From contig NIVC01002918.1 in assembly GCA_002269645.1 (NCBI GenBank), forward strand, positions 62,001-126,000: a stretch of 64,000 nt of DNA, given 5' to 3'. How positions within the stretch are numbered: position 1 is the first letter of the stretch; each line of letters begins with the position of its first letter. This stretch comes from Macrostomum lignano (Eukaryota). The translations under genes were made by a program, and so were the position numbers. The notes beneath the pieces are model-generated. The model did no database searches. It was not told the DNA's origin and saw nothing but the letters and a program-made list of their open reading frames with translations. Of the stretch, positions 3,138 through 54,839 are shown piece after piece.

Positions 3138-3593
3138 AGTAGAAGGCATGAGGGGGCTTCTAGGACAAAATTTTTCACGTCCTCCATAATCCACCTAAAT
3201 CCATCCATATTATCCCTGACAGAATCAGAAAAAAAGGGGGGTCGCACTCGCTCACAAAACGTCCTCCATAATCCCATAAAATCCATCCATATTGTCCCCG
3301 ACAGAATCATGAAAAAAAGGGAGGGGTCGCACTTGCTCCGAAAACTTCGAACATAATCCCATTAAATCCATCCATATTATCCCTGACAGAATCAGAGCAG
3401 GTGTCCACTAACACCTGTTATGTTCACTGACACTGACATAATCCACTGACATCCACCCATAGCATCTTCGAAACAATCAGAAAATAATCTGCATTCTTCT
3501 CCCCACATTCAATTCGCAACATGAAACCAGATCCCTAAGACTTTAAATCATCAGCGCAGGGTCCTTACCCATTGAAAAAATCTAAATTTTTTC
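3138..3593 (+). repeat. Left terminal inverted repeat (~455 bp), with three internal ~115-bp sub-repeats
   Basis: Reverse complement of 25096-25551; the mismatches I found lie in the innermost ~90 bp. Confidence 0.95.
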
Positions 3594-3599
3594 TGAATC

Positions 3600-4905
3600 T
3601 TGATTGTCTTTTAATGCTTACGAAGCTTCGTAAATTGAAATTTTCTGTCGCTAAAAATATTCATTCTGAACTACTACTTCTACTAGCTCGTAGGAGTAGG
3701 TTAAAAATATATTTTAGCATTTTATGCTTTTTCATTAAAGAGTTTACAAAGCTTCGTAAATCGAAATTTTCTGTCGCTTAAAATTTTCATTCTGAACTAC
3801 TACTTCTATTAGCAGTAGTTTAAAAATATATTTTAGCATCTTACGCTTTTTCATTAAAGAGTTTACAAAGCTTCGTAAATCGAAATTTTCTGTCGCTAAA
3901 AATATTCATTCTGAACTACTACTTCTACTAGCTCGTAGGAGTAGGTTAAAAATATATTTTAGCATTTTATGCTTTTTCATTAAAGAGTTTACAAAGCTTC
4001 GTAAATCGAAATTTTCTGTCGCTTAAAATTTTCATTCTGAACTACTACTTCTATTAGCAGTAGTTTAAAAATATATTTTAGCATCTTACGCTTTTTCATT
4101 AAAGAGTTTACAAAGCTTCGTAAATCGAAATTTTCTGTCGCTAAAAATATTCATTCTGAACTACTACTTCTACTAGCTCGTAGGAGTAGGTTAAAAATAT
4201 ATTTTAGCATTTTATGCTTTTTCATTAAAGAGTTTACAAAGCTTCGTAAATCGAAATTTTCTGTCGCTTAAAATTTTCATTCTGAACTACTACTTCTATT
4301 AGCAGTAGTTTAAAAATATATTTTAGCATCTTACGCTTTTTCATTAAAGAGTTTACAAAGCTTCGTAAATCGAAATTTTCTGTCGCTAAAAATATTCATT
4401 CTGAACTACTACTTCTACTAGTAGTAGGTTAAAAATATATTTTAGCATTTTATGTTTTCTCATTAAAGAGTTTACGAAGCTTCGTTAGTTGAAATTTTCT
4501 GTCGCTTAGAATTTTCACTCTGAACTACTATTTTTACTAGCAGTATGTTAAAAATATATTTTAGCATTTTCTGCTTTTCACTCTGAACTACTACTTCTAT
4601 TAGCAGTAGGTTAAATATATATTTTTGCATTTTCTGTTTTCTCATTAAAGAGTTTACGAAGCTTCGTTAGTTGAAATTTTCTGTCGCTTAGAATTTTCAC
4701 TCTGAACTACTACTTTTACTAGCATTAGGTTAAAAATATATTTTAGCATTTTCTGCTTTTTCATTAAAGAGTTTACGAAGCTTTGTAAGTTGAAATTTTC
4801 TGTCGCTTAGAATTTTCACTCTGAACTACTACTTTTACTAGCATTAGGTTAAAAATATATTTTAGCATTTTCTGCTTTTTCATTAAAGAGTTTACGAAGC
4901 TTCGT
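3600..4905. repeat. Subterminal AT-rich tandem array, ~11 units of ~120-127 bp, alternating A/B variants in the first part
   Basis: Recurring GAAATTTTCTGTCGCT...CTACTACTTCTA...AAAGAGTTTAC.AAGCTTCG. Confidence 0.92.
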
Positions 4906-5212
4906 CAATTAGCAAAAAACCGGAATATGTTGATTCAGTTATCATTTATTTTAATAAGCAGGCTTTGAAGTTAGAAGAGGCTTAAAAATTACAACCATAG
5001 TGTATTTAGATTAGCGACTTTAAGTCCTATCAATGCTCAGTTGTTCAAAAGAGCTCAGTCATCCATAGCTGCTTGACCGTCTCCAACACCAGCAGGCTGG
5101 CCAGCTTCATCATCTGCAGCAAAAAGTTGAGTGGTAGTATTCACATTAGTACTATATTTTTATAAAAGAGAGGCAGTGGGGAGAGCGCAGTACACATATT
5201 GGTTCTACCAAT

Positions 5213-5775
5213 AATACACACGGTTTTTCCATTGTCCCACACATATTGGTGCTACCAATAATACACACGGTTTTTCCATTGTCCCACACATATTGGTTCT
5301 ACCAATAATACACACGGTTTTTCCATTGTCCCACACATATTGGTTCTACCAATAATACACACGGTTTTTCCATTGTCCCACACATATTGGTTCTACCAAT
5401 AATACACAAGGTTTTTCCACCACCTCACATATTGGTCCAGCTACAGTTGAGAAAATCTCCCCCCCACGTTCCACATTCCACACTGTCGCGTGCTTTTTTA
5501 CACAGCAAGCTCTGGCTATTTTTAGCACAAGACACACATATTGGGTGGGCCAATAATACACACGGTTTTTTCCTTCATTTCACACATATTGGGTGGGCCA
5601 ATAATACACACGGTTTTTTCCTTCATTTCACACATATTGGGTGGGCCAATAATACACACGATTTTTTCCTTCATTTCACACATATTGGGTGGGCCAATAA
5701 TACACAGTTTTTCCTTCATTTCACACATATTGGGTGGGCCAATAATACACACGGTTTTTTCCTTCATTTCACACA
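5213..5775. repeat. Two related 47-48 bp minisatellite blocks (5 units each) built on TATTGG-N5-CCAATA
   Basis: CACATATTGGTTCTACCAATAATACACACGGTTTTTCC x5, then CACATATTGGGTGGGCCAATAATACACACGGTTTTTTCC x5. Confidence 0.9.
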
Positions 5776-6491
5776 GATAACTCACAGTAAGCATCGAGAA
5801 GGCCCTGAAGTTCAGCCGCCGATGGAGGTCTTGTTGGGGGAGTCGGATCTAGCCAATCTGCTGCATCCGTTTGCCACCACCTTTCGCTCCGAATCGTCCT
5901 AGAGTTGTCATGCAGGAATGTAGCCGAAACAGAGCAAAAGCGGAGCCGTGGAAGCTCGGTCACCAGAGTATAGATGTTATGGCGGGATTGCACGTGGTAG
6001 TAACTCACGCTGAATAGTTCCGCCAGGCTTGTTAATGTCTGCTGATGCCTCGTAATAAATTGGTCATACACTTTTCCAAGAAAAAATGCTGCCACCCAAG
6101 TTCGCCGGTTGTAAATTTGGCCCTGCTTAACCAGGTTTTCATGCAGTTCCGGCACCCCATTGTCAACAGGACCTCGGTTTGTGATGTCGTTGCAGATGGC
6201 TTCTAACTCCCCCTCACTAATTACCTCTGCCTGAGCCGCTTGCTCGTTCTCATATTGAAGCGAACTTCGAAGTTTATGGAATACATCCGTGGCTCTTTCC
6301 TTCATCTTCCGTATTTTCATTTCTTCACTGACTCGCAGATGCCTTTCTTCATCTTCAGATAATCTTTCCCAGAGTTCTCGAACCATGTCTTTAACGTCAT
6401 CCTTATGCTCCTCAACAATAAATTGATCGATGGAATCGATAAAACCTGTGAGATCTTGCATGGTGATTCTGGCTGTAGTTGCATTAAACAT
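5769..6491 (-). CDS. Polinton hypothetical protein (240 aa, helical)
   Basis: Open ATG-initiated ORF with A-rich start context like the other element genes; no recognised motif. Confidence 0.65.
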   Translation of the reverse strand: MFNATTARITMQDLTGFIDSIDQFIVEEHKDDVKDMVRELWERLSEDEERHLRVSEEMKIRKMKERATDVFHKLRSSLQYENEQAAQAEVISEGELEAICNDITNRGPVDNGVPELHENLVKQGQIYNRRTWVAAFFLGKVYDQFITRHQQTLTSLAELFSVSYYHVQSRHNIYTLVTELPRLRFCSVSATFLHDNSRTIRSERWWQTDAADWLDPTPPTRPPSAAELQGLLDAYCELSV

Positions 6492-6619
6492 TTTGTCTAC
6501 AAATATATGAGTAGAGTGTTTTAAATAGTTTAGAATTAAAAAAGCAACTGAAAGTTACAGAAAAAGGTTTAGTAAGTCAGGATTTACTTACGAAGATACG
6601 ATGCGAATTCGAGCGTCTG

Positions 6620-6868
6620 CTAGAAACAAATTTCTCCTATTTCTTTCAGCAGTCTGCTTATTTCTTTATTAGAAGCATATAATACAAACCCCCCCCCCAC
6701 CACCCCCCCAAGGAGAAGCATGGTGGAAAGAGAGATTGTAACCGAAACCAGTGTGCTCAAGACTGTACACTTGTGTGGAGAGAAGAGAAGCGAAGGCCAG
6801 AAGGCCAGAAAACTTAACTCTTCTCCCAAACAGCCGCTAATCCAGCTGAATTTTCTTGCTTGAATCAT
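6620..6868 (-). CDS. Small hydrophobic ORF (82 aa) overlapping the PLA2 stop codon (ATGA)
   Basis: Its ATG overlaps the TGA of the upstream gene. Its C-terminus GGGFVLYASNKEISRLLKEIG resembles the PLA2 tail GAGFALHAPRKELGRLLKELG. Confidence 0.45.
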   Translation of the reverse strand: MIQARKFSWISGCLGEELSFLAFWPSLLFSPHKCTVLSTLVSVTISLSTMLLLGGVVGGGFVLYASNKEISRLLKEIGEICF

Positions 6869-7314
6869 TCTGCTTTCTCAACCCCCAGCTCTTTCAGCAG
6901 TCTTCCTAATTCTTTCCTTGGTGCGTGCAATGCAAAGCCCGCCCCCAAACAGCCGCCGACCCCCAACCCCAGTTTTGTCTTACTAAAAATAACAGCTTTA
7001 ACTAGCTTCCGAGCGATCGATTCCCTCCACCCGCTTGAAACCCCTATATTGTCTAGTCTCTTAAGCATTTCTTTGTCCCAACGATTCTTCTCCTCAGGAA
7101 AATCTCTATATTTAACGTCATGCCACATGCAGACAGAGTCTAGCTCGTTCACAGGCTCATGCCCAGGATTTGGATTATCGTTTGTATCTAACTGAATTTC
7201 AAGTGGATTCAAAGGCCCGCAATATTTGTACCCGGGAATGGTCCAGCCTTTGTTTGGATGAGGAAGCTTTTGTATCAGTCCATGTGAATCTAACTTACCA
7301 CCAGAGCGTTGCAT
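6865..7314 (-). CDS. Parvovirus VP1u-type phospholipase A2 (PLA2X-like entry protein)
   Basis: Ca-binding loop PGYKYCGPLN and catalytic helix ELDSVCMWHDVKY (HDxxY). Confidence 0.88.
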   Translation of the reverse strand: MQRSGGKLDSHGLIQKLPHPNKGWTIPGYKYCGPLNPLEIQLDTNDNPNPGHEPVNELDSVCMWHDVKYRDFPEEKNRWDKEMLKRLDNIGVSSGWRESIARKLVKAVIFSKTKLGLGVGGCLGAGFALHAPRKELGRLLKELGVEKAE

Positions 7315-7344
7315 TATTTTATTTTAAATTTTCTTTTTAAAAAA

Positions 7345-8382
7345 ATGACAGATCAGAAACTTAAAAAACTCTACTACAGCGACAAAGGATTCTTTGTAGG
7401 AAAAAATGCAGTCACCAAACTCGCAGAACTAAGTAAGGAACCAAAAGCTACAGTAGAAAAGTGGCTCTCTAAGCAAGCAGTCTACCAAGTCTATTTCCCA
7501 CCAGTAAAATTTGAAAGGCCCCATTTCAGTATTTATAAACCTAATGAGGCGCACCAAGCAGATCTTCTGTTTCTCCCCAATGACTCGGGCTACAAGTATG
7601 CTCTCACAATTACAGATGTTGCCTCCAGATATAAGGAAGCGAGACCGCTTAAGACGAAGAAGTCAGAAGCAGTTGCAGCCGCCCTCCAAGATATTTATAA
7701 AAACTCACCCCTTAGCTACCCTGAAACCTTTATGACTGATCCTGGCAAAGAATTCATGGGTGCAGTGAAATCACTTCTACATAAGCATGACACAGAGATT
7801 CGCTATGGCAGAACAAACTTGCACAGAGATCAGGCTTTTGTGGAAAGATTCAATCTAACTCTAGCCAAGAGGCTATTCACTAAGCAGACAGCAGAGGAGC
7901 TGAAACTAAAAAGTGGCCAATACTATACCAAGTGGACAGACCGGCTCCCCACTGTTATAGAGCAACTGAACAATGAAGTCACGCGCATGACTGAATTGAA
8001 ACCGTCCCATGCAATTAAACAAGACACTGTCGAACTTAAGTCATCTCATAAAACAGACAACAACACGACAACCCCACACAACACACACAACACAAAACAC
8101 ACCTCAAACTACCCTAAGCTTCCAGGAGTTGAATCACCATACATACTGACAAACTCTGAGTTTCTACGCTTTTTATATCTACCTGGAGAGCTAGAGAAAG
8201 ACACTAAAAGAAGAGCTACAGATCCATACTTCAGCCTTGATGTACATAAAATAGACAGACATTTTACCTCCGACTCTGGTGACTATTACTTTTTATCTCA
8301 GGCCTTTAACCCTAAATCCCCCACACGGTCATTCACTAGAGCTGAACTCCTAGTGATACCGGCTGACACGGAAATTAATTAA
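7345..8382 (+). CDS. INT: Retroviral-like DDE integrase
   Basis: HQADLLFL, FMTDPGKEF and QAFVERFN triad. ATG at 7345 in AAAAAATG context (the ORF track starts at a TTG). Confidence 0.95.
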   Translation: MTDQKLKKLYYSDKGFFVGKNAVTKLAELSKEPKATVEKWLSKQAVYQVYFPPVKFERPHFSIYKPNEAHQADLLFLPNDSGYKYALTITDVASRYKEARPLKTKKSEAVAAALQDIYKNSPLSYPETFMTDPGKEFMGAVKSLLHKHDTEIRYGRTNLHRDQAFVERFNLTLAKRLFTKQTAEELKLKSGQYYTKWTDRLPTVIEQLNNEVTRMTELKPSHAIKQDTVELKSSHKTDNNTTTPHNTHNTKHTSNYPKLPGVESPYILTNSEFLRFLYLPGELEKDTKRRATDPYFSLDVHKIDRHFTSDSGDYYFLSQAFNPKSPTRSFTRAELLVIPADTEIN

Positions 8383-8398
8383 AATATTAAAATAAAAA

Positions 8399-8845
8399 AT
8401 GACAAAGATTGAAACCAGAACCATCAATAAACTCAATAAAATCATTGAATCAAAGAAACCAGGTCTTATATCAATTAAAGGTGTCAAAGTAAAAATCGAT
8501 CCCACGCAGCAAATAGTTGAGTGTAATGAGCAAAGACACAGCATAACAGATGAAAAGTCAGGAGGAATCCTACCATTAGCAGCTCTTATTCCGATCATTG
8601 CAGGCGCTGTAAGTGCCGCAGGTGGTGTAGCTGGAGGTGTAGCAACTGCTGTTAAAGCTGGGAATGATAGAGCCCACCAGCTAGAATTGCAAAAGATTGC
8701 AAGAGACAAAGGTATAACAATTAAGGCAGGAGAGGGCTGCCCCGATCGTGATGATTGTGAGCATGAAAATTCTGTAAGCAAGTCTGACATTGTCAAAGCC
8801 ATCATGACACTGCACAATGCTGGGTTTACAATAATGCGGATGTGA
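8399..8845 (+). CDS. Adenovirus pX/pre-Mu-like core or membrane protein (148 aa)
   Basis: SGG-ILPLAALIPIIAGAVSAAGGVA resembles the adenovirus pX C-terminus RGG-ILPLLIPLIAAAIGAVPGIA. Confidence 0.65.
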   Translation: MTKIETRTINKLNKIIESKKPGLISIKGVKVKIDPTQQIVECNEQRHSITDEKSGGILPLAALIPIIAGAVSAAGGVAGGVATAVKAGNDRAHQLELQKIARDKGITIKAGEGCPDRDDCEHENSVSKSDIVKAIMTLHNAGFTIMRM

Positions 8846-8969
8846 TGAGGTTTAAAATCCCACTTTATCCAGCTTCATAAACCTAACGCTACTTATAGTA
8901 TGTAGAAACAGTTCAACTTTTCTATCAGGGTGGTCACCCTCAAAATTTTTTTTTATTTTAGAGAAAAAA

Positions 8970-16815: not shown

Positions 16816-16853
16816 TGCTGTTGTTGTGTTGTTGTTGTTGTTGTTGCTGATGT

Positions 16854-19800
16854 CTAGCAGTTTTCCGGTGGTTTCCTCTTCCACCACTCCCACACCTTCA
16901 GCGCTTCCTCCGCATTCGTGTGGACCTCGCTCAGGATCCCGCTCCTCCATCCCCTCCAGCAGCTGTCCAGGACCGGGCAGGCCACCACGTGCTCGATGGT
17001 CTCCTCTTCCATACCACAATGCCTGCACTTCCCTTCCTGCTGCAGCCCGATCCTCTTCCTAAACGCCGCCAACTCCAGGGAGTGACCCGTGCGCCACCGT
17101 CTAAAGCTGACTTCCATTTTCCTGCTCGCGAATTCCGGCTCTTTCCTTGGCCCCTCCGATCCGCCGTACGTCTCTCTCATCCTCTCGTGCCTCCACACCT
17201 TCCTTCTACACCGTCTCCTCGCCAACCTCGCCATCGTGCTTGCCATGACTCCAATTCCTTCGCTGCTCACCTCCCGGACCGCCCGGTTAGCCCATTCGTC
17301 CGCCACTTCATTACCAACAATCCCACAGTGGCTCGGTATCCACAGCAACACCATCTCACGTCCTTCCATCTCGCTCAGCGCTTTCCTTATGCTGCAGACA
17401 ATCGGGTTCCTGCTGGCCCTCTTAATGGCCTGAATCCCGCTCTTGCTGTCTGTCGCAACCACAGCTTTTTGCCAGTTGTTGTTTGCCTCCAGCCACTCGA
17501 TAGCCTCTTTCAACGCGTACAGCTCCGCCTGCATCGAGGACGCAAGCTGTCCGCCGGCCACCATACGCTTCTCGATCACCTCGCCGCTATCATACCTCAA
17601 CACCACCAGGCTTCCGCCTCCTTTGCCTTCCTTGTCAACCGAACCGTCCGTGAAGATTAGTATGTCCGCTTCGCCGCCAGCCTCTCTTAACCTTCTCTCT
17701 CCCATCTTCCTGCATTCCTCCTCCGTGTCTGGCCTTCCTCCCCCGTCATCGAACGTCACGTGCCGCAGCTTGATCCACGGTGGTTCCCTTTCCGCCTCCG
17801 ACAGCCTCGGCAGGTCGACCTCCCATTCTAGCATGTACCTGCGCGCCCAGGTCCTCCAGCTTTCCCTTCTGAGCCTGCAGGCCGGTCCTTCAGACGCAAG
17901 CTTCCATCTAATCGAACCCACCTTCGCTCTCAGCAGGCTGTCCATCTTCCTCACCACTCGCCATCTGGCCAGCGCCTCCAGCTCCTCCGTGCCCGACTCT
18001 TCTCTGACTCCGTCGATGGGGGTCGTGGCGAGCAGCCCACCTATAATTCTGGTTGCCCTCCGCTGCGTCACCTCTAGCTTGCGCCAGCACGCTCTGCTGA
18101 TCCATGGCATCCAGGCCGTGGCCCCATACATGATTTTACTCTCGATGAGGGCCACGTACGTCTGCCTGAGGAGCCCGCTTCTCCATCCCCAGTCGCTACC
18201 GGCCAGCCGTCTCATCATCTGGATTCTGCTTTTACAAGCTTGAGCCACCTCTTGCACGTGCTTAGCAAAGTTCAGCCTCCTGTCGTAAGTCACTCCTAGG
18301 AACCTGGGGTGAGGTACCCACTCCATATCTTCTCCGTTGATTCTTATGTTGATCCGCTTCGGCTCCTTGCACTTGCTACTCAACCCGAACAAGGTGAGCG
18401 TGCACTTCTTGGCCGCTATCGGCAATCTCCATTGTGTACTCCACTCCTGCACCACCTCGACCGCCTGCTTGATGCTGCTGGCCGCTACCTCCTCGTCTTT
18501 GCTACACGACCAGCACGCTAGGTCATCCGCGAATCCGCTCACCTCCATGTTCGGCATTCCCTCAATCCTCCGCAGCAGATCGTTAATAAAGATGATAAAC
18601 AGGATCGGCGACAGCACCGATCCCTGCGGCAGTCCCTGCCTCATAACCACGCCAGCGCTGTCTCTATCTTGGTACCTCACTCTGGCCATTCGGTTCACTA
18701 GCCAACTTCTAACCCACTTCACCAACTTCCTGCTCAGTCCAAGTTCCAGCATCTTCCAAAGCAGCCCATGCCTCCAGACTTTATCAAAGGCCCTCTCGAA
18801 GTCAAAGAGGGCCAGCACTCCTTTCTCCCCCTTCTGGAAAGCGTCTTCCATCGCTTGCGTCAGCCTCAGTAGCTGGTCCTCGGTGGATCTGCCAGCTCTG
18901 AAACCGGCTTGGCTGTCGCTTAGCAGTGCCTTGTCTTCCAGATGGTATTGTATTCTCTTCGACAGGATTCTCTCCATCCACTTCCCGAGGCAAGAGGTCA
19001 GGCTGACCGGTCTGTACGACCCGACCAGCGCAGCGTCTTTGCCGGGCTTGAGCAGCGGTATAATCCTAGCCCGCCTCCAGTTCTGTGGGACCTGCGCTTC
19101 GTCGTACGACTGGTTGAACAGCACCTGGATCGCCTCAATCATACATCCTGGTAGCGCCCTCAGCAGCTTGGGGTGGATATTATCCTCCCCAGCCGCCTTG
19201 GATCCATCCAGCTCCTCCAACGCGTTGTAGACCTCTTCTACTGAAATCTCTTGCGCGTCTCTTCCATCCGGACCAGCCTCCGCCAGCCGCCTCGTCACCG
19301 CCCTTCTGGCCCATCTGAATCCCACCGGCGTTTTGATGTTGCTGACTCTCTTGTACTCCCTCGCGAACGCTCCAGCTTTGGCCGTACTGCTCTTATACTC
19401 CTTGCCCTCATGTAGCAGCACCCGGCTGTCCTCATTACTCTTCCTGCCCTTCAGCCTGTTAAGAACAGTCCACATCTTAGCAGCCGTGCCGTTCTTCTCC
19501 AGCAGGTAGTTCCATTCTTCTCTCTTTTTCTTGCTGATCAACTCTCTCACCTCCTCATCCCGCCTCTGCCTCTCCTCATCATCCGCGCCTTCCCAGGCCT
19601 CGTCCCTTTCTTTCAACATTTGCACTACCTCTTCGTCCATCAGGTTCCGGTTTCTGGAGGCTACCGTCTTCGTTCCCACCGTCTGCCTCGCTGCCCTCGT
19701 GATTATGCTCCTCATCGCTTCCTCGACACTCCTGGTACTGCTGCAATCCACAGCCTCCTTCTCACAGCTCTCCTCGATTCGCTGCTTGTAACCTTGCCAG

Positions 19801-21836
19801 TCGGCCTTTTTCCAATTCCACCGCACCAGCTTCTTCACACGGCACTCCTGCTCTAATCTTCCGCTTGTGATCAAGATCGGCCAGTGGTCGGAGCTCAGTG
19901 CCTTGACAACCTCCCAGCTCCATCGCTGCTCGCGGCTGCCATGGCAGAAGGTGACGTCGGGTGTAGATTCTACGTCCGTGCCCCTGCCGACTCTCGTCAC
20001 TTTGCCGTCGTTGAGGCAGATCATGCCGTGCGCATCCGCCCAATCCGTCAAATCGTCACCTCTGGCATTTTCCGCAGCGCTGTTATCCCAGGCCGCGTCG
20101 TGGGCGTTGAAGTCGCCTCCGACAATCCAATCCTCTCCTGCTGGGATTCCAGCTGCTTCGATCTGCTCTTTTCCACCAGGCGGCATGTAGCAGTTAGCAA
20201 TCTTGATCTTATTGCCGCCCTTGCACACCTCCATCGCCATCACTTCTAGCCGACCATCCCTTCCTCTCCTCTCCACCTCAATCATTTTGAAGCTGATCCC
20301 ATTCTTTATCACCATAGCAATTCCCCCTCCACGGGCTTTCCAACACCCTTGCGATCTCCGCCTGTCTTGCCTCACTACAGCGTAGCCTGGAACGACCGGG
20401 TCCTCGTCCTCCGCCCTGAGCTTGGTCTCCTGCAGCATCGCCACGTCCACACGCCTTTCCGCCAGCATCATACGCAGCTCTTCTCTTTTAGCCCCCATGT
20501 GATCGCAGTTCCACTGCATGATGACCCAGCTCGCGGTGCCTTCCTCTTTGGTCTCCACCGATTCCATCTTCTTTCCGCCCGCTGCACTGTTGCCTTCTTT
20601 CCCCTTATACCAATCATCCAGGCACTCTTTGCATTTCCATCCACCAGCCCTCTTCCACTTCGCCAACAGCTCCCGACTAACCTCCCCCGTGCAGCACCAG
20701 TGCACTCTCTTCTCGCAGAGGCTGCAGCTCGCACCGACTCCTCTGCGGCAGTACCTCTTGCACTCCGCACATCTAACTGGCCTCGGTTCCACCAGCCTCC
20801 TGCCCATTTCCGGGGCTACGTCTGCGATGCCACGGCACTCAGTACAGTTCCAGTGCTCTTGCTTAACCGCTCTCCATCTGCTGACCCCCGAGCAGCTCCT
20901 GTGCGCCGTTCTACCGCACTTGCTGCAGCTCAGCCCCAGGAAGTCAGCTCTCATGGTCCTCGTACATTCCGTGCAGCTCTTCTTGCTCCTGCTCGGCTTC
21001 TCTCCTGGCTCAGCGGCCTCATCACCTTCCCTGTCCACCTGCAGCTCCTCCTCTCTTTTTGAGTCGTTTCCGCTGTTTTTATGGGTTTCTTTTTGGATTT
21101 TTCGGCTTTCGCTTTTCTTCTGGGCCTCCACACTGCTAGTCCTGTCTCCTGCCGTGGCCTCCCGTTCGCCGGTGCCGTCCCTTCTCGGGCTGAGGTGCTC
21201 CCTCAGCTTGCTCACAAGCTCTCTCTTCTCGACTGCCCGCCAAGCTTCCGCCGTGGCCTTGTCATACGCCCCGCGCTTCCCCTTCTCGTGCCTCCTGCTG
21301 TAATTCTCAACAAAGCTTTCGGCTCTGCTGCTATCGATCCACGACGTTAGCTGACACCCAAACCACTGAATCTGCACAGATTCACGGCCTCTGTCCCGCT
21401 TCCTCCGCTCCAGCACTTCGCCCGGCCACCATGGCCAACCGGTGAGCTTGGCCCAGACCACCTCTCCCTCCGGCTGTCTCACTTCGCGTTCCTCCTCGTC
21501 CACCATCGCCTCCTCTCTCATCTCCTTATGCTCCTCTTCCTTCTGCGTTCTTCCTTCCTTACTCCTGCAGCACGGCCCGATCCACTCCTCCTCTCCCTCT
21601 CCTTGTCTCGGTCCTTTTTCCCTCGCGTAGAACCTGGCCCTGCACAGCTCGCTGCATTTTAAATGTAATTTGCCTTTGCAGCACGCGCATTCTGGGCCTC
21701 TTCCGCGGATTCGGCCCCCGCATCTGGCACAGCTCCTTTTATCGCTCTCGCCCCTCGCTGCTGGTCCTGGGTTCGTCTCCACGTCTCCCGCTTTCAACAT
21801 CTCCTTGCTATCCTTGCATCCTTGATTGCTAGACAT
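16854..21836 (-). CDS. LINE polyprotein (1660 aa): 2A - PHD - PWWP - PHD - PHD - APE endonuclease - RT - RNase H - CCHC-like zinc motif
   Basis: QWNC..., LQETK, GGDFNAH, SDHWP (APE); YRPVSLTS, QAGFR, LFDFERAFD, PQGSVLSP, FADD (RT); FTDGS, AELYAL, TDSKS, WIPSH.G..GNE.AD (RNase H); CRHC...H...C. No stops. Confidence 0.95.
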   Translation of the reverse strand: MSSNQGCKDSKEMLKAGDVETNPGPAARGESDKRSCARCGGRIRGRGPECACCKGKLHLKCSELCRARFYAREKGPRQGEGEEEWIGPCCRSKEGRTQKEEEHKEMREEAMVDEEEREVRQPEGEVVWAKLTGWPWWPGEVLERRKRDRGRESVQIQWFGCQLTSWIDSSRAESFVENYSRRHEKGKRGAYDKATAEAWRAVEKRELVSKLREHLSPRRDGTGEREATAGDRTSSVEAQKKSESRKIQKETHKNSGNDSKREEELQVDREGDEAAEPGEKPSRSKKSCTECTRTMRADFLGLSCSKCGRTAHRSCSGVSRWRAVKQEHWNCTECRGIADVAPEMGRRLVEPRPVRCAECKRYCRRGVGASCSLCEKRVHWCCTGEVSRELLAKWKRAGGWKCKECLDDWYKGKEGNSAAGGKKMESVETKEEGTASWVIMQWNCDHMGAKREELRMMLAERRVDVAMLQETKLRAEDEDPVVPGYAVVRQDRRRSQGCWKARGGGIAMVIKNGISFKMIEVERRGRDGRLEVMAMEVCKGGNKIKIANCYMPPGGKEQIEAAGIPAGEDWIVGGDFNAHDAAWDNSAAENARGDDLTDWADAHGMICLNDGKVTRVGRGTDVESTPDVTFCHGSREQRWSWEVVKALSSDHWPILITSGRLEQECRVKKLVRWNWKKADWQGYKQRIEESCEKEAVDCSSTRSVEEAMRSIITRAARQTVGTKTVASRNRNLMDEEVVQMLKERDEAWEGADDEERQRRDEEVRELISKKKREEWNYLLEKNGTAAKMWTVLNRLKGRKSNEDSRVLLHEGKEYKSSTAKAGAFAREYKRVSNIKTPVGFRWARRAVTRRLAEAGPDGRDAQEISVEEVYNALEELDGSKAAGEDNIHPKLLRALPGCMIEAIQVLFNQSYDEAQVPQNWRRARIIPLLKPGKDAALVGSYRPVSLTSCLGKWMERILSKRIQYHLEDKALLSDSQAGFRAGRSTEDQLLRLTQAMEDAFQKGEKGVLALFDFERAFDKVWRHGLLWKMLELGLSRKLVKWVRSWLVNRMARVRYQDRDSAGVVMRQGLPQGSVLSPILFIIFINDLLRRIEGMPNMEVSGFADDLACWSCSKDEEVAASSIKQAVEVVQEWSTQWRLPIAAKKCTLTLFGLSSKCKEPKRINIRINGEDMEWVPHPRFLGVTYDRRLNFAKHVQEVAQACKSRIQMMRRLAGSDWGWRSGLLRQTYVALIESKIMYGATAWMPWISRACWRKLEVTQRRATRIIGGLLATTPIDGVREESGTEELEALARWRVVRKMDSLLRAKVGSIRWKLASEGPACRLRRESWRTWARRYMLEWEVDLPRLSEAEREPPWIKLRHVTFDDGGGRPDTEEECRKMGERRLREAGGEADILIFTDGSVDKEGKGGGSLVVLRYDSGEVIEKRMVAGGQLASSMQAELYALKEAIEWLEANNNWQKAVVATDSKSGIQAIKRASRNPIVCSIRKALSEMEGREMVLLWIPSHCGIVGNEVADEWANRAVREVSSEGIGVMASTMARLARRRCRRKVWRHERMRETYGGSEGPRKEPEFASRKMEVSFRRWRTGHSLELAAFRKRIGLQQEGKCRHCGMEEETIEHVVACPVLDSCWRGWRSGILSEVHTNAEEALKVWEWWKRKPPENC
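21762..21836 (-). other. 2A-like ribosomal skipping (StopGo) peptide
   Basis: MSSNQGCKDSKEMLKAG-DVETNPG/P matches D(V/I)ExNPG/P. Confidence 0.85.
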
Positions 21837-21839
21837 TAT

Positions 21840-21921
21840 GCCCTCCTTCGTCTGGCTTTCGTTGATTTCCAACTTCGGCCAGTCTACAGCACACCGCGTA
21901 GAGGTGTGAGGGCTGTGCTGC
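21840..21921 (-). ncRNA. HDV-like self-cleaving ribozyme at the LINE 5' end
   Basis: P1 GCAGCAC:GUGCUGU (G1-U wobble), P2 GCCCUC:GAGGGC, P3 ACC:GGU, L3 UCUACGC, P1.1 CU:AG, P4 CUGGC:GCCAG, J4/2 ACGAA. G1 coincides with the TSD-defined boundary. Confidence 0.85.
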
Positions 21922-22646
21922 TGCTGTTGTTGTTGTTGTTCTAGATATTTTATGACTTCCGCCTGATCTGGCAAATCGAACCATTGTTTAAAGTGCTTGT
22001 ACTTTTTGAATCTAGTCAGGTTGACACCGTTATCATACATAAGTCTCAGGACTTCTGGGGCCTTTAGTATTTCTATATCTCTAGCAAGAGCAAAAGTCAC
22101 TAGATCTCTATAGTTCTTTAGCTGTTTGTCCGAGATTCTCTCTTGGTTCTTGGTCATAAAAGTCAGTAAGGTTTCTGTGAAAGGAATGCTCTTAGTTTCC
22201 AAGCCTTTGACAACAGAAATATGTTTCTTATTTATGTCGATATAATATTCCACTGGTTCATTATAAATGTTTTTTCTCCACATACTTATTCCAAATACAT
22301 ATTTCCCATCATGTTCGACACGCTCTACTGGTCCAAAAATGTTATCTGTCACTTTTAGTTGTGATTGATGTGGTTGTGATTGTTGTGGTTGCGGCTGTAT
22401 CTGTGGTGCTTCTGGAATTTTGCCCAAAACCTTTTGCACTTGGGTTTCCTGTATGTCGTCGATAGTTTCTTTGACCTGATCAATATTTTTCTTAGCTTCT
22501 CCATACCCGGGTTTATGAAACTCTGTGGCTGCTTGGACAAACTCATTGTAGGATTGTTGCTCCTTATTTATTAGCCCGGTAACTCGTTTCTCTGCTTGTG
22601 CTAGCTTCTCCAATTCAGATATCTGCTGTGTACTTTTCCGCTTCAT
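21922..22646 (-). pseudogene. N-terminal part of the interrupted Polinton gene (ends ...IKYLEQQQQQ), fused in frame to the LINE ORF
   Basis: First ~241 codons of the 1930-aa ORF have Polinton-like AT-rich composition and an A-rich ATG context. Confidence 0.85.
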
Positions 22647-22676
22647 TTCTTATTTTATTTTATTTTTAGTTAAAAA

Positions 22677-23963
22677 ATGAACGACCCACTGACACCAGTT
22701 TTCTACAAGATTAACAAGCCTATTTTGAGTGATGATAGCACAATCAAAGCGACTCAGGTAAGAGTTCCCAGTCAGGAAAATCAGAATGAAACTAATCTTG
22801 GTCCTGGTCAAACACTGACATTTACATACAATGGATGTTCGTCTCTGGTTAGTGTGCACAGTCTTAAGAGCGGCTTCCATATGACATTTCAATTCAAGAC
22901 AAAAGGTGGTGCGGATGCGGCTCGTGCTAACGTTGACAAGCATGATGCGGATGTGGCTCTGATCAGTAACTTTTGGGCGTACATGTTCAAGGAGTTTAGT
23001 GTATCGAATGGGAGCACAGAGTTGGAGCGAATCGCCAACTTTGGAATTGTCTATGACGCTCATTGTTTGATCGAGAATCCTGATTTTATTCAGTTGGGAA
23101 GTGGTGCGGGTTATATTGCAGATGAAAAAGAAGGAGACATCAATGACAGTGGCTATAAAAAGAGGAAGAAGAGATACAACTATGCATTGCAAGGTGCTGA
23201 TGATGCTGCTAAGAACCCGCAGTATCGGTCTGTTGATGTATTTGTACCATTGAGATTCATGAGTGGATTCTGTAATACATTTAATCGACTGACTAGTAAC
23301 TTTAGCTACACCTTTAGGATGACTAGAGATGATCGCAGTAGAGTGTTGTGGACTGGGGCGGACCACACAAGGATGGAGGTGAAGCTAACCGGAATCGAGC
23401 TGTATTTGGAAGTCATTGAGCCAAAGACCGCACTAAAAGCAGACTATCTTAAGGCAATAGAGAAGGACATTGATGTTGCATACACGGCCTACATGTGTCG
23501 AGATGAGCGAAACGAAACTAGAACAAACATCTGCATTAAAGAGGGATCATGCAGCAATCCAAGGTATATTATTATTAACATAAGAAACCCAAATAGCATT
23601 ATACGCTACATGCATGGAGACGTGCGGTCCATTCAGCATGAAATCAGTGATAATCTTTACCCTGCACTGCCACAAAATGGAGATTTCAGTCAGAACAAGA
23701 TTAGCAAATTTTATAGCGAGTTGGTCGACTTGGCTGTGAAAGAGAACAACGGAATTGCTATCACTGCTCTTCAATATGGAACTCTATATCCAATGTTTGG
23801 CGCTGATGTGTCTGCCAGACAAATGCCTACTGATAACAGCCCTGTGAATATCGTGACTAACATTGAGAGGACTGCCGCAACACCCGTGGACCTGTACATT
23901 ATCTATGCATTTGAGAGGAAGGTGAAGCTTAACATGATCAACAATTCATCCAGTAAAGTTTAA
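22677..23963 (+). CDS. PY: Major capsid protein (double jelly-roll)
   Basis: 428-aa beta-rich ORF in the usual position upstream of the penton gene; N-terminal DDSTI...N.....LTF pattern. Assigned by size, context and pattern. Confidence 0.8.
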   Translation: MNDPLTPVFYKINKPILSDDSTIKATQVRVPSQENQNETNLGPGQTLTFTYNGCSSLVSVHSLKSGFHMTFQFKTKGGADAARANVDKHDADVALISNFWAYMFKEFSVSNGSTELERIANFGIVYDAHCLIENPDFIQLGSGAGYIADEKEGDINDSGYKKRKKRYNYALQGADDAAKNPQYRSVDVFVPLRFMSGFCNTFNRLTSNFSYTFRMTRDDRSRVLWTGADHTRMEVKLTGIELYLEVIEPKTALKADYLKAIEKDIDVAYTAYMCRDERNETRTNICIKEGSCSNPRYIIINIRNPNSIIRYMHGDVRSIQHEISDNLYPALPQNGDFSQNKISKFYSELVDLAVKENNGIAITALQYGTLYPMFGADVSARQMPTDNSPVNIVTNIERTAATPVDLYIIYAFERKVKLNMINNSSSKV

Positions 23964-23984
23964 ATATTTTTTTAGGACAAAAAA

Positions 23985-24848
23985 ATGGAAGCTATAGCCG
24001 AAAGACTAAATAACATTGTTTCACACTCTAAGGAGAGCATTCCTATTACAATAACCGGGCGAATTAATGACTCAAACGGGATGTTTGTTGAAAAATTAGA
24101 GCAGGCGATTCGCCTGGATCCAGGCGCTAATTACCATGTCTATCTTAACGACTTCACTGGTTGGTCAAACGTTCCCAATGTGATGGCAGCAAATAATAAG
24201 TTTTATTACAAATGGAAAGGTGCAGCAGCAGACCCTGTGGTATTCCATGTGAGCACGCAAAGTGTGGATACCTACAATAACTTTCTAGAAAATGTCTTTA
24301 CTAAGAGAGGCCATTTTGAGACACCTGATGCGAGTAAGCCAGAGAAGAAACTGTTCCCTGTCAAACTAACCTATGATCTCACTGTAATGAGAGTGGTCAT
24401 GCAAGTTCACAAAGATGCGGAGGTTGAGTTTAAAGATGACACTTGGTATAGGGAACTGGGATTCGAGAAGAAAGTTTATAAGGCAGAATCCGCGGCGCGG
24501 ACCGCCACTCAAGCATCGGGGACTGTTACAATGGTCCGGGAAAGTGTACGCGGTTTGTTCTTAGCACCCAATATAGCAGACATTGTAAAGGGTTTGAATA
24601 TTCTAATCAGAAGCAATCTCAGTCTTGATTGGGTATTTAAGGGAAAGCGAACGAATATTTTGTACAACATCTCCAACTCTGTTGCTGGAGGACAGATGGT
24701 GGTAGAGAAACCAAATCCAGTGAAAAGAGTTGTATTGAGTAATAAGGAGATTCACGAGATTGTGCTACAGTTTGAGACTGAAGATGGGATGGGTGTTGAT
24801 TTCAACGGTGAAGAGTTTGTATTGACGTTGATCATTGAGAGAATGTAA
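23985..24848 (+). CDS. PX: Minor capsid protein (penton, single jelly-roll)
   Basis: PNV..ANNKFYY, ELGF, NILIRSNL and the C-terminal EDG..VDFNGEEFVLTLII pattern of Polinton pentons. Confidence 0.82.
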   Translation: MEAIAERLNNIVSHSKESIPITITGRINDSNGMFVEKLEQAIRLDPGANYHVYLNDFTGWSNVPNVMAANNKFYYKWKGAAADPVVFHVSTQSVDTYNNFLENVFTKRGHFETPDASKPEKKLFPVKLTYDLTVMRVVMQVHKDAEVEFKDDTWYRELGFEKKVYKAESAARTATQASGTVTMVRESVRGLFLAPNIADIVKGLNILIRSNLSLDWVFKGKRTNILYNISNSVAGGQMVVEKPNPVKRVVLSNKEIHEIVLQFETEDGMGVDFNGEEFVLTLIIERM

Positions 24849-24852
24849 GAAA

Positions 24853-25089
24853 TCACAATTGCCTAATGATTTCTGCAAAGTTATAGTAGCTGTCGTAATC
24901 GTTAATGACTACTCCATACTTATGAAACCAGTGTCTTTGAAGAGCTAGATTAATATTAGGGGCATTGATATCAACATCGGGCCAATATTTTCTCATGTAC
25001 TCGCTGCATTCCTTCTTGCATTGGTACTTACTCTTGTAATTAGGCTCGTGCGCTTTGTAATAAGAACCTGGAGAGACAACTGGAAACAT
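24853..25089 (-). CDS. Small aromatic-rich ORF (78 aa) starting at the inner edge of the right TIR
   Basis: ATG preceded by TTTTTCTCTAAAA, the same start context as other element genes; converges on the penton gene with a 4-bp gap. Confidence 0.5.
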   Translation of the reverse strand: MFPVVSPGSYYKAHEPNYKSKYQCKKECSEYMRKYWPDVDINAPNINLALQRHWFHKYGVVINDYDSYYNFAEIIRQL

Positions 25090-25095
25090 TTTTAG

Positions 25096-25551
25096 AGAAA
25101 AATTAGATTTTTTTCAATGGGTAAGGACCCTGCGCTGATGATTTAAAGTTTTAGGGATCTGGTTTCGCGTTGCAAATTGAATGTGGGGAGAAGAATGCAG
25201 ATTATTTTCTGATTGTTTCGAAGATGCTATGGGTGGATGTCAGTGGATTATGTCAGTGTCAGTGAACATAACAGGTGTTAGTGGACACCTGCTCTGATTC
25301 TGTCAGGGATAATATGGATGGATTTAATGGGATTATGTTCGAAGTTTTCGGAGCAAGTGCGACCCCTCCCTTTTTTTCATGATTCTGTCGGGGACAATAT
25401 GGATGGATTTTATGGGATTATGGAGGACGTTTTGTGAGCGAGTGCGACCCCCCTTTTTTTCTGATTCTGTCAGGGATAATATGGATGGATTTAGGTGGAT
25501 TATGGAGGACGTGAAAAATTTTGTCCTAGAAGCCCCCTCATGCCTTCTACT
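25096..25551 (-). repeat. Right terminal inverted repeat
   Basis: Reverse complement of 3138-3593. Confidence 0.95.
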
Positions 25552-28959: not shown

Positions 28960-29629
28960 AACCTTTTAGCTACAAAATGTGTGTTTAAAATCTGTAGAAC
29001 ATGAAGTAGTGCTCATTTATGTGGTTCATTGTATAATGAAATGATTTCAATTCATAAATTCTATAAAGGTGCTTTTGAACCCATTAATTATTTCTTGTAT
29101 TATTGTACTTTTAATTCTATTTTAGCGTCTGATACATAAATAACTTTATTATAAAATATTTGTACTTAGTGAATTTAAGATATAGAAATTATGATAATGA
29201 AAAAATATTTCATTCTGTTCAAGAGAGGAAGAACAACCAGTTCATTCTGTTTAATTTTTCCTAAATTTCGGAAAGCAGAAAATTCGTGCAGCTTACCATT
29301 GAGAATCCTTTCAATTTTTTTTCTCAAGTTGTGGCTTAACTGAAGGAGAACTGGCAGCACTGACTGGATTAATTCAAATTTTGTATAAAATAATTATCGC
29401 AGCAAATAGAAAATGGGAATATTCAATTAGGCCCAATAGTTAAGGTAAATGGAAAATATTTCTAATATGCTTTAACAAATAGCATTCAAACGTTGATTTC
29501 CTTCCAGTGAAATTAACGTTTGTTTTAATAAGTTAAAAAATCCGGAAAAATTATTTAGAATTTGAAACAGTATCATGCACTGGTTGTGCGAGATTGAGTG
29601 AGTGCTGACCGGGTGCGCCTTCACCTCTG

Positions 29630-39430: not shown

Positions 39431-39621
39431 GTCATAGACTCCTCCTTCTCGATTTGGTCACAAAGACTTCGTTCCCGATTCGTGAAAGAATTTCTGTTTT
39501 TAACAAATAACTGAAAACAGTGATTTTGTAAAAAAACATCTCCGTTCAACACTAAATGATTAAGAAGTTCCAATTTATAGAGTAATCTTAGCTTAAGCAT
39601 AAAAGACAGACAAATAATCGG

Positions 39622-43761: not shown

Positions 43762-43814
43762 CTGCGGGGGTGAAAGTGGGGCGGGGGAATTGAGGTTGGG
43801 TAGTAGTGGGGAAT

Positions 43815-54702: not shown

Positions 54703-54839
54703 AAGCAACAAGCAAGATGGCTGCAATTTGGAAATATTTGGCATGGAACTTAAATTGGTATTTCAATTGAAGCTGAGCACTTTGATGGGGCATTGCAGAT
54801 TGCGTTTTGGGGGCTGTGGTGCTGGAGATTGTGAATGTT

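What the first reader, a model, noticed from the sequence alone, without database searches (positions are those of the whole stretch)
16816..22646. PolyQ-targeting LINE inserted in frame into a Polinton gene, with ribozyme and 2A providing two routes of release from the host gene
Seen: the LINE sits in the (CAA/CAG)n tract of a Polinton gene in sense orientation, and its 3' tail is (AAC)6. Its 5' end GCAGCA continues the CAG repeat, and the 85-nt leader is stop-free. The result is one 1930-aa ORF: viral N-terminus, polyQ, ribozyme-encoded linker, 2A, LINE protein. Removing the LINE at the 12-bp TSD restores a 398-aa viral gene. Inference: tail/target homology may aim the element at polyQ-coding DNA, and 5' microhomology (CA/GCAGCA) may fix the frame. 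The element could then use host-gene transcription and translation, releasing its RNA by self-cleavage and its protein by StopGo. I do not know of this combined strategy being described.
Basis: partly seen in the sequence, partly recalled or inferred. Interest (0 to 1): 0.92.

Follow-up and report, generated by a model that had tools for sequence, protein, structure and literature searches.

The report
Glutamine-repeat-seeking LINE inside Polinton gene
An intact jumping gene (a LINE) sits in the only CAA/CAG repeat of this 64-kb window, fused in frame to a gene of a virus-like Polinton element. Its relatives elsewhere share a self-cutting RNA, a stop-free leader read as glutamine and a 2A "protein-splitting" signal, so this lineage may ride on host transcription and translation.

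Summary
A 5,094-nt LINE (window 21921..16828, minus strand) lies in the CAA/CAG linker of a Polinton-like gene, in sense and in frame, giving one 1930-aa ORF. Its 5' end folds as an HDV-like ribozyme. A 2A motif (GDVETNPGP) follows 45 codons later, and the 3' tail is (AAC)6.

New evidence comes from seven close relatives on metagenome contigs.
- The ribozyme is conserved, with compensatory changes in P1, P1.1, P2 and P3.
- All eight 5' junctions lie in (CAA/CAG)n, after "..CA".
- The stretch from the first base to the 2A is stop-free in 8/8, and in the glutamine phase in 7/8.
- One relative has no ATG before its 2A.
- A second relative appears fused in frame to an unrelated host exon.

Five of the eight junctions are head-to-tail LINE arrays, so the target is CAA-type repeats in general, not polyQ genes specifically.

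Ribozyme plus 2A is known from L1Tc. Microsatellite-targeting LINEs and ribozymes that free a LINE RNA from a co-transcript are also known. What is new is the CAA/CAG target, the glutamine-phase open leader, and a reason for the N-terminal 2A. Use of host translation is inferred, not shown.

Verdict: partly supported; new variant of a known kind; interest 0.72.

The parts
3138..25551 (.). Polinton/Maverick-like integrated element, bounded by 454-nt terminal inverted repeats (3138-3591 and 25098-25551, 98% complementary)
   Evidence: inverted repeats; rve integrase 7309-8382 (+), A32-like packaging ATPase 14950-15750 (-), double-jelly-roll-like capsid protein 22677-23963 (+, below the Pfam cut-off). 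No protein-primed polymerase was detected.
16344..22646 (-). Polinton-like gene of unknown function, interrupted once by the LINE. No other breaks are seen in its two parts.
   Evidence: Both parts align collinearly with the intact homologues P0019 (387 aa) and P0020 (404 aa). The LINE lies in a variable linker between two conserved domains. Phase and length arithmetic.
16854..22646 (-). Fused 1930-aa ORF: Polinton gene N-terminal part, polyQ, ribozyme-encoded 28 codons, 2A, LINE protein
16828..21921 (-). Intact single-ORF non-LTR retrotransposon (LINE), 5,094 nt, about 56% GC in a roughly 40% GC element
   Evidence: No second copy in the window.
21922..21933 (-). Upstream copy of the 12-nt flanking direct repeat ACAACAACAGCA (target-site duplication, ambiguous because the context is repetitive)
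16816..16827 (-). Downstream copy of the 12-nt flanking direct repeat
21840..21921 (-). HDV-like self-cleaving ribozyme fold (82 nt): P1 GCAGCAC/GUGCUGU, P2 GCCCUC/GAGGGC, P3 ACC/GGU, L3 UCUACGC, P1.1 CU/AG, long P4, J4/2 ACGAAG. Predicted cleavage is 5' of G at 21921.
   Evidence: Covariation with relatives.
21834..21836 (-). First in-frame ATG of the LINE, 85 nt from its 5' end and 3 nt after the ribozyme
21762..21788 (-). 2A/StopGo core motif GDVETNPGP (G294|P295 of the fused ORF)
   Evidence: The motif is conserved at the N-terminus of relatives.
21240..21467 (-). PWWP domain inside the LINE protein
   Evidence: PF00855, E=1.9e-11. Also present in the Macrostomum lignano relative P0001.
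19875..20519 (-). APE-type endonuclease domain
18288..19043 (-). Reverse transcriptase domain
   Evidence: E=1.1e-40
17277..17666 (-). RNase H domain
16828..16845 (-). 3' tail (AAC)6, preceded by an 8-nt 3' UTR after the TAG stop (16856-16854)

Best explanation
This is a young, intact, probably promoter-less single-ORF LINE (2A, Cys-rich fingers, PWWP, APE, RT, RNase H). It belongs to a lineage that inserts into CAA-type trinucleotide repeats.

How it most likely works:
1. The endonuclease nicks the (TTG)n strand. The freed 3' end pairs with the RNA's (CAA)n tail and primes reverse transcription. This fixes the orientation: LINE sense strand = CAA strand (inferred).
2. The 5' junction forms after '..CA' and the element begins with G or A, so the repeat register runs on into the element (shown, 8/8).
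3. The reading frame from that first base to the 2A is kept stop-free and in the CAA/CAG = glutamine phase (shown, 8/8 and 7/8). When the repeat is a polyQ-coding tract, as in this Polinton gene, the insertion is therefore sense and in frame by construction.
4. Transcription comes from outside, either the host gene or an upstream copy in a tandem array. The HDV-like ribozyme cuts 5' of G1. That gives the exact 5' end seen at the flanking repeat and, in arrays, the CAA-tailed 3' end of the upstream unit (fold shown, activity inferred).
5. The 2A detaches the LINE protein, starting at Pro295, from whatever was translated upstream. Here that would be a 294-aa product made of the host N-terminal domain, polyQ and the ribozyme-encoded peptide (inferred).

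The Polinton gene loses its conserved C-terminal domain.
For: - Anatomy at the stated coordinates.
- Target: the LINE occupies the only run of five or more CAA/CAG units in 64 kb on both strands.
- Junctions: eight 5' junctions (window, L001, L005, L009, L016, L017 twice, L019) all lie in (CAA/CAG)n and all end ..CA| followed by G or A. A ninth, more distant relative (L020) also follows a CAA/CAG tract.
- Tails: CAA-type in the window element and in L001, L002, L005, L017a and L018.
- Ribozyme: a model built from three relatives alone finds window 21921 (E=0.0045) and scores L016, L017 and L019 at 37-73 bits. Compensatory changes occur in P1 (GCAGCAC/GUGCUGC, GCCCCAC/GUGGGGC, ACAGCAC/GUGCUGU), in P2 (a different helix in every element), in P3 (ACC/GGU against GCC/GGC) and in P1.1 (CU/AG against CC/GG). 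CGAA in J4/2 is kept in all.
- Leader from first base to 2A: no stop in the 2A frame in 8/8 (45-125 codons), while the other frames usually have stops. Shuffle fractions are 0.02-0.28 each. The spacer-only test gives a product of 9e-4.
- Glutamine phase in 7/8, despite leader lengths that differ by up to 80 codons.
- L005 has no in-frame ATG between ribozyme and 2A. It lies after an apparent exon (GT..AG intron of 59 nt) of a coiled-coil ORF, in phase with it.
- L016 is open in phase for 122 codons upstream, to the contig end.
- Several relatives have a called Met only 3-7 residues before the 2A, which suggests that translation enters from further upstream.
- N-terminal 2A is seen in 36 of the 169 relatives held at that point.
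- Published logic that promoter-less LINEs pair target specificity with an HDV-like ribozyme, and that translation of the uncapped product is unexplained: PMC3383444. For R2: PMC3774820.
Against: - No expression, cleavage or StopGo data exist. Ribozyme and 2A activity are inferred from sequence.
- Rfam does not reach its gathering score. The nested fold energy is unremarkable (z = -1.56).
- Five of the eight junctions (six of nine with L020) are tandem LINE arrays, where no host ORF is in phase. Host-gene fusion therefore cannot be the main way of life.
- Seven of the eight elements have their own in-frame ATG before the 2A, so ordinary initiation is possible.
- The L005 fusion depends on an intron that I inferred. 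The L016 upstream sequence matches no known gene.
- The elements are related, so counts such as 7/8 are not independent events.
- The 12-nt flanking repeat sits in repetitive sequence and could match by chance.
- The relatives come from short metagenome contigs of unknown organisms.
Confidence: 0.55

Rival explanations
1. Incidental fusion. The LINE prefers CAA repeats, uses the ribozyme only to free its RNA from read-through transcripts, and starts translation at its own ATG. The 2A acts as published for single-ORF LINEs, as a translational attenuator. Landing in frame in a polyQ tract of a Polinton gene is then a by-product with no role for host translation.
For: - Most junctions are tandem arrays, not genes.
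- Seven of the eight elements have an ATG before the 2A.
- The published view of the 2A is down-regulation or reduced protein abundance (PMC3708506, PMC3894237, PMC13405545).
- A single in-frame junction has a 1-in-3 chance.
Against: - It does not explain why the stretch between the first base and the ATG (24-51 codons of unalignable spacer) stays stop-free in every element.
- It does not explain why the glutamine phase survives large leader length changes.
- It does not explain why L005 lacks an ATG.
Confidence: 0.25
2. Leader translated from the processed RNA. After self-cleavage, the uncapped RNA is translated from a non-AUG or ribozyme-assisted start at or near its 5' end, as proposed for R2 by Ruminski et al. 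2011 (J Biol Chem; cited from my own knowledge and from the reference list of PMC4035085; the paper is not held). The 2A trims off the ribozyme-encoded junk peptide. Host ORFs are irrelevant.
For: - The open leader begins at the first base in all elements.
- L005 has no ATG.
- This works equally well in tandem arrays, which are the commonest context.
Against: It does not require the glutamine phase relative to the upstream repeat, which is kept in 7/8. No evidence for internal initiation is available.
Confidence: 0.15
3. Exon trap. The CAG units at the LINE 5' end act as splice acceptors, so upstream host exons are spliced onto the element and supply cap and start codon. The 2A then removes the host part.
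For: - The Macrostomum lignano gene model P0001 joins about 140 unrelated residues directly to the ribozyme-encoded peptide (..AAELQHSPQ..).
- Expanded CAG repeats can create splice acceptors (bioRxiv 10.1101/2023.10.16.562581, abstract only).
Against: P0001 is an automatic gene model without DNA available here. In the window the fusion needs no splicing.
Confidence: 0.05

Closest known systems
L1Tc / Ingi of trypanosomes (Ingi clade LINEs)
   Same: Single ORF with APE, RT and RNase H. HDV-like ribozyme in the first ~77 nt that cuts 5' of +1 and frees the RNA from co-transcripts (PMC3185411, PMC3383444, PMC4035085). 2A near the N-terminus of the ORF (PMC3708506, PMC3894237).
   Different: L1Tc also has an internal promoter (Pr77). 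It is not reported to target CAA/CAG repeats or to keep its leader open in phase with the upstream flank. It has no PHD/PWWP module. The RT phylogeny of the window element was not tested.
R2 (28S rDNA-specific LINE)
   Same: Promoter-less and target-specific. Co-transcribed with the host gene and released by a 5' HDV-like ribozyme. In many R2 lineages the 5' strand of P1 is target sequence, and the cDNA/target match shapes uniform 5' junctions (PMC3774820).
   Different: R2 has a restriction-like endonuclease, sits in a Pol I transcript that is not translated, and has no 2A. Here the 5' strand of P1 belongs to the element (by the flanking repeat) and only mimics the repeat in most members.
Microsatellite-specific APE LINEs: Dong (TAA)n, Waldo (ACAY)n, Mino (AC)n, Kibi (TC)n, Koshi (TTC)n
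   Same: APE-type LINEs found repeatedly inside one kind of simple repeat, with tails matching the target and frequent tandem arrays (PMC3812793). Dong is listed among elements whose ribozyme cuts at the element's 5' end (PMC3774820).
   Different: None of them targets CAA/CAG. None is described with a 2A or with a coding phase tied to the repeat. CAA/CAG is special because mixed tracts are mostly polyQ-coding.
2A-bearing single-ORF LINEs of animals (Ingi-1_AC, CR1, Rex1, L2 and Crack members; Odon et al. 2013)
   Same: 2A 40-80 aa from the N-terminus, sometimes followed by PHD fingers before the APE domain, with no ORF1 (PMC3708506).
   Different: Those papers do not mention ribozymes, target repeats or upstream reading phase. 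They explain the 2A as down-regulation.

Membership tests
HDV-like self-cleaving ribozyme | Nested double pseudoknot (P1, P1.1, P2, P3, P4) with the cleavage site at the 5' end of P1 | tested here: met
   All helices can be drawn in the window and in seven close relatives, plus L020. There are compensatory changes in P1, P1.1, P2 and P3.
HDV-like self-cleaving ribozyme | Conserved cytosine in J4/2 (catalytic C) | tested here: met
   CGAA precedes the 3' strand of P2 in every element.
HDV-like self-cleaving ribozyme | Reaches the curated score of an Rfam HDV-type family | tested here: not met
   Best hit HDV-F-prausnitzii, 25.5 bits against a gathering score of 44. Nothing in L001-L006. These models are narrow. 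The model built here links the sequences.
HDV-like self-cleaving ribozyme | Self-cleavage activity | not testable with these tools
   Only indirect: the predicted cleavage site coincides with the 5' end defined by the flanking repeat.
2A / StopGo recoding element | C-terminal motif D(V/I)ExNPG|P in the ORF | tested here: met
   GDVETNPGP at 21788-21762. The same motif is in 36 of 169 relatives at the N-terminus.
2A / StopGo recoding element | Peptide-bond skipping during translation | not testable with these tools
   No expression data.
APE-type non-LTR retrotransposon | APE endonuclease and RT in one ORF, simple-repeat tail, flanking duplication | tested here: met
Ingi / L1Tc clade | Placement of the RT domain within the clade in a phylogeny with reference elements | not tested
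   No reference sequences were available from the tools. Only the architecture agrees (single ORF, APE-RT-RNase H, 2A, ribozyme).
Target-specific (microsatellite) LINE | Independent copies repeatedly at the same target sequence | tested here: met
   8/8 close-clade 5' junctions, plus L020, lie in (CAA/CAG)n. The window copy is in the only such tract of 64 kb. The sample is small and partly tandem arrays.
Polinton / Maverick | Long terminal inverted repeats | tested here: met
   454 nt, 98%
Polinton / Maverick | Retroviral-type (rve) integrase | tested here: met
   7309-8382, PF00665, 40 bits
Polinton / Maverick | Protein-primed family B DNA polymerase | tested here: not met
   No match for any large ORF in Pfam, PHROGs or PDB sequences. 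The replication gene remains unidentified, so 'Polinton-like' is the safer name.
Polinton / Maverick | Double-jelly-roll major capsid protein and FtsK/A32-type packaging ATPase | tested here: inconclusive
   ATPase met (PF04665, 29.3 bits against a cut-off of 22.8). Capsid protein only 23 bits against a cut-off of 27. No PDB or phage match.

The most novel reading that the evidence does not exclude
A LINE lineage has evolved to live as an in-frame passenger of glutamine-repeat-coding DNA. Its tail and junction register place it in sense and in the Gln phase. Host promoter, cap and start codon drive its expression. The 2A frees the LINE protein from the host-polyQ-leader peptide. The ribozyme later trims the same RNA to unit length. 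In this sub-branch a PWWP domain steers the element to transcribed gene bodies. This would be the first functional explanation of the N-terminal 2A of single-ORF LINEs, and an answer to how ribozyme-processed, promoter-less LINEs get translated.
Probability: 0.3. Interest if true: 0.9.

Novelty: new variant of a known kind. Interest (0 to 1): 0.72.

Why it matters
Two questions about LINEs are still open in the literature read here. First, why do many single-ORF LINEs carry a 2A at the very N-terminus? Papers from 2013 to 2026 still call it 'regulation' or 'reduced abundance' (PMC3708506, PMC3894237, PMC13405545). Second, how are promoter-less LINE RNAs that a ribozyme leaves uncapped translated at all (PMC3383444)?

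A lineage in which the repeat target, the junction register, a stop-free glutamine-phase leader, the ribozyme and the 2A all line up offers one coherent answer. Existing genome, transcript and ribosome-profiling data can test it.

It also adds CAA/CAG, the polyQ-coding repeat, to the known list of LINE target microsatellites. That implies a class of insertions which truncate polyQ proteins in frame. Here the affected gene belongs to another mobile, virus-like element.

Tried and rejected
- Rfam on the window region and on six relatives gave one sub-threshold hit and otherwise nothing useful.
- My hand-written HDV descriptor hits about once per kb in the window. It is too loose to count as evidence.
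- The minimum-free-energy fold without pseudoknots has z = -1.56 and is not informative.
- MAFFT misaligns the 3' halves of the ribozymes because P4 varies in length. I therefore listed the helices sequence by sequence instead of using the pair-counting tool.
- The ribozyme pattern scan found nothing in viral contigs. In metagenome contigs it gave 9 hits, of which 8 are false (five bacterial oxidoreductase-like genes and three unrelated sequences) and one is true, L009.
- The Macrostomum protein P0001 has no DNA on record.
- The search for an empty or closer copy of the interrupted Polinton gene in viral contigs failed.
- No polymerase, protease or solved-structure match was found for the other Polinton ORFs.
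- The upstream sequences of L005 and L016 match no Pfam family and no other locus.
- Assembly chimeras at the repeats are unlikely. The CAA/CAG tracts at the junctions are 12-35 nt, and the k-mer sizes in the three contig names that show one (119-141) are longer. This is an inference.
- The relatives L003, L004 and L006 have other 5' ends and other tails ((CA)n, (GAA)n) and no detectable ribozyme of this type. The syndrome is therefore limited to a sub-branch.
Full report
**1. What is in the window**

The minus strand carries one ORF of 1930 aa, 22646..16854. Pfam finds PWWP (aa 394-469), APE endonuclease (710-924), reverse transcriptase (1202-1453, E=1e-40) and RNase H (1661-1790) in it. The first ~240 aa have no LINE domain.

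Reading both junctions gives the following.
- Upstream flank: ...GAA(CAA)4CAGCA.
- First base of the element: G at 21921 (GCAGCAC...).
- Own ATG at 21836.
- 2A core GDVETNPGP at 21788-21762.
- Stop TAG at 16856-16854, then 8 nt of 3' UTR and an (AAC)6 tail ending at 16828.
- A 12-nt direct repeat ACAACAACAGCA on both sides (21933-21922 and 16827-16816).

The element is 5,094 nt, has about 56% GC inside a roughly 40% GC surrounding, and has no internal stop or frameshift. No second copy is in the window.

**2. The host**

The LINE lies inside a 22.4-kb element bounded by 454-nt terminal inverted repeats (3138-3591 and 25098-25551, 98%). This element has an rve integrase, an A32-like packaging ATPase and a weak double-jelly-roll capsid match. 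No protein-primed polymerase could be found, so I call it Polinton-like.

The interrupted gene (16344..22646) is broken once, by this insertion. Searched as they stand, the N part finds two uninterrupted homologues of 387 and 404 aa. Both window parts align collinearly with them.

The LINE sits in a poorly conserved linker between two conserved domains. The homologues (45-46% identity) are Q-rich there in one case but have no long polyQ. No closer or empty copy could be found.

**3. Chance**

The only runs of five or more CAA/CAG units on either strand of the 64 kb are those flanking the LINE. A random insertion would hit that tract with a probability of about 1e-3. The in-frame junction (1 in 3) and the 28-codon open leader (10% of shuffles) mean little by themselves.

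**4. Relatives**

The LINE protein has no close relative in the protein collection. The best hit is a 'PWWP domain-containing protein' of the flatworm Macrostomum lignano (46% identity), followed by proteins on short metagenome contigs. One of those contigs comes from a beach-sand metagenome. Twelve look-ups and one DNA pattern scan gave the loci L001-L006, L009 and L016-L020.

Seven elements share the window's 5' architecture: L001, L005, L009, L016, two in L017, and L019. They are about 39% identical to the window in protein. L020 is a more distant case.

**5. The ribozyme is real**

Rfam gives only a sub-threshold HDV-like hit, but it starts exactly at 21921. A covariance model built from L001, L005 and L009 alone finds 21921..21882 as the only significant hit in 83 kb (E=0.0045). 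It scores L016, L017 (twice) and L019 at 37-73 bits.

Drawn out, every element has these features:
- P1 of 7 bp starting at the first base.
- A 6-bp P2 pseudoknot.
- A 3-bp P3 closing a 7-nt L3.
- A 2-bp P1.1.
- A P4 hairpin of variable length.
- CGAA in J4/2.

Compensatory changes occur in every helix.
- P1: GCAGCAC/GUGCUG(C/U), GCCCCAC/GUGGGGC, ACAGCAC/GUGCUGU.
- P2: different in each element, for example GCCCUC/GAGGGC, GAUCCC/GGGAUC, ACCUCC/GGAGGU, CUCCAG/CUGGAG.
- P3: ACC/GGU against GCC/GGC.
- P1.1: CU/AG in the window against CC/GG in L001.

The predicted cleavage site coincides with the 5' end defined by the flanking repeat. Activity itself is not shown.

**6. Target and junction**

All eight 5' junctions lie directly after CAA/CAG repeats. 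In all eight the flank ends ..CA and the element begins with G (seven cases) or A (one case). L020 also follows (CAA)5(CAG)3CAACAGCAACAG. Tails are CAA-type in the window element and in L001, L002, L005, L017a and L018.

Context of the eight junctions:
- Five are the tail of another copy, in head-to-tail arrays (L001, L009, L017 twice, L019); L020 is a sixth such case among the nine.
- One is the Polinton gene (the window).
- One is an apparent host exon (L005).
- One is an unidentified 283-nt sequence preceded by (CAA)17 (L016).

The target is therefore CAA-type repeats in general. PolyQ-coding tracts are a subset.

**7. The leader**

The 2A frame has no stop from the first base to the 2A in 8/8 elements (45, 92, 51, 63, 98, 87, 125 and 87 codons), and also in L020 (68 codons). 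The other two frames mostly have stops. Shuffled leaders are stop-free in 2-28% of trials each.

I then restricted the test to the unalignable spacer between the ribozyme and the first in-frame ATG. Six elements can be tested this way, and the product of the shuffle fractions is 9e-4. These numbers overstate independence, because the elements are related.

In 7/8 the first base is the third position of a codon, so the upstream CAA/CAG reads as glutamine. This holds although leader lengths differ by up to 80 codons. In L009 the 2A is in another phase, and both phases are open there.

L005 has no in-frame ATG between the ribozyme and the 2A. It follows an ORF of 202 codons, a 59-nt GT..AG interval and a short exon CCA CTC CAA CAG CAA CAG CA|G that is in phase with the LINE. 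The intron is my inference. The ORF has no Pfam match.

**8. The 2A**

A D(V/I)ExNPGP motif lies at the N-terminus of 36 of the 169 relatives held at that point. It often follows a called Met by only 3-7 residues. This hints that the real start is further upstream.

**9. Mechanism**

Shown:
- The anatomy.
- The conserved, covarying ribozyme fold.
- The repeat target.
- The junction register.
- The open glutamine-phase leader.
- The conserved 2A.

Inferred:
- The (TTG)n strand is nicked and primes on the (CAA)n tail, which fixes orientation.
- The register and the leader phase then make any insertion into polyQ-coding DNA an in-frame fusion.
- Outside transcription supplies the RNA, and the ribozyme trims it. 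In arrays it also makes the CAA-tailed 3' end of the upstream unit.
- The 2A separates the LINE protein (from Pro295) from a 294-aa upstream product.

The rivals are listed with their weights. In the first, the fusion is incidental and the 2A only attenuates translation. In the second, the leader is translated from the processed RNA by an unconventional start, as proposed for R2. In the third, the CAG units act as splice acceptors.

**10. Known and new**

Already known:
- HDV-like ribozymes that release LINE RNA from co-transcripts: R2, L1Tc, Dong, R4, baggins (PMC3774820, PMC3185411, PMC3383444).
- An N-terminal 2A in single-ORF LINEs (PMC3708506, PMC3894237).
- Both together in L1Tc.
- Microsatellite-specific LINEs, for TAA, AC, ACAY, TC and TTC (PMC3812793).

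I found no report of any of the following in six full-text searches that ran and the papers read:
- A CAA/CAG-targeting LINE.
- A leader kept open in phase with the target repeat.
- The idea that the 2A frees the LINE protein from upstream-translated host sequence.

A 2026 preprint still regards the role of 2A in retrotransposons as unclear (PMC13405545). Hence: new variant of a known kind.

**11. Limits**

The sample is eight related elements from short contigs of unknown organisms. There are no expression data, no empty site of the same Polinton family and no clade assignment.

Noticed in passing
window 21240-21467 (minus strand): A PWWP domain lies inside the LINE protein, between Cys-rich fingers and the APE domain. 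It is also present in the Macrostomum lignano relative and absent from the L001/L005-type relatives. PWWP domains read H3K36-methylated, transcribed gene bodies (own knowledge), which would suit an element that depends on host transcription.
   Followed up: partly
L001 1-1440; L009; L017 1-11914; L019 900-2100; L020 3700-8100: Relatives mostly sit in head-to-tail arrays joined only by a short 3' UTR and (CAA)n. The downstream ribozyme would therefore also cut the 3' end of the upstream unit just after its CAA tail.
   Followed up: partly
L020 7749-8060: In this distant relative the downstream copy's 2A frame is the same frame as the upstream copy's ORF. Only that ORF's stop codon lies between them, and the repeat is read as Thr/Ala rather than Gln.
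   Followed up: no
L004 1-210 and 4790-4883: A relative (35% identity to P0002) has a (GAA)5 tail, a 10-nt flanking repeat ACAGCAGTAC and a 5' end GAGAAG. Here too the 5' end resembles the element's own tail unit.
   Followed up: no
L016 1-365: The contig starts with (CAA)17. An unidentified 283-nt sequence then begins GCCCCAC, the same heptamer as P1 of the L017a ribozyme, before the next CAA/CAG tract and the LINE. It may be a remnant leader of another element.
   Followed up: partly
window 8970-12788 (+): Two adjacent large ORFs (760 and 500 aa) of the Polinton-like element have no recognisable polymerase, primase or helicase domain. There is only a weak endonuclease VII-like motif at aa 533-575 of the first. 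The replication module is unidentified.
   Followed up: partly
window 3618-4905 and 5192-5775: Subterminal tandem repeats lie inside the Polinton-like element next to its left inverted repeat: units of 119/245 nt, and of 47/48 nt.
   Followed up: no
window 29616-30722, 37878-39482, 43809-44899, 46142-47045, 47669-48887, 51903-52743, 54177-54706: The rest of the window is packed with minisatellite arrays (units of 20-44 nt, up to 64 copies).
   Followed up: no
window 252-1118 (+): A fragment of an LTR-retrotransposon pol gene is present, with an RNase H end and an integrase H2C2 zinc-binding domain.
   Followed up: no
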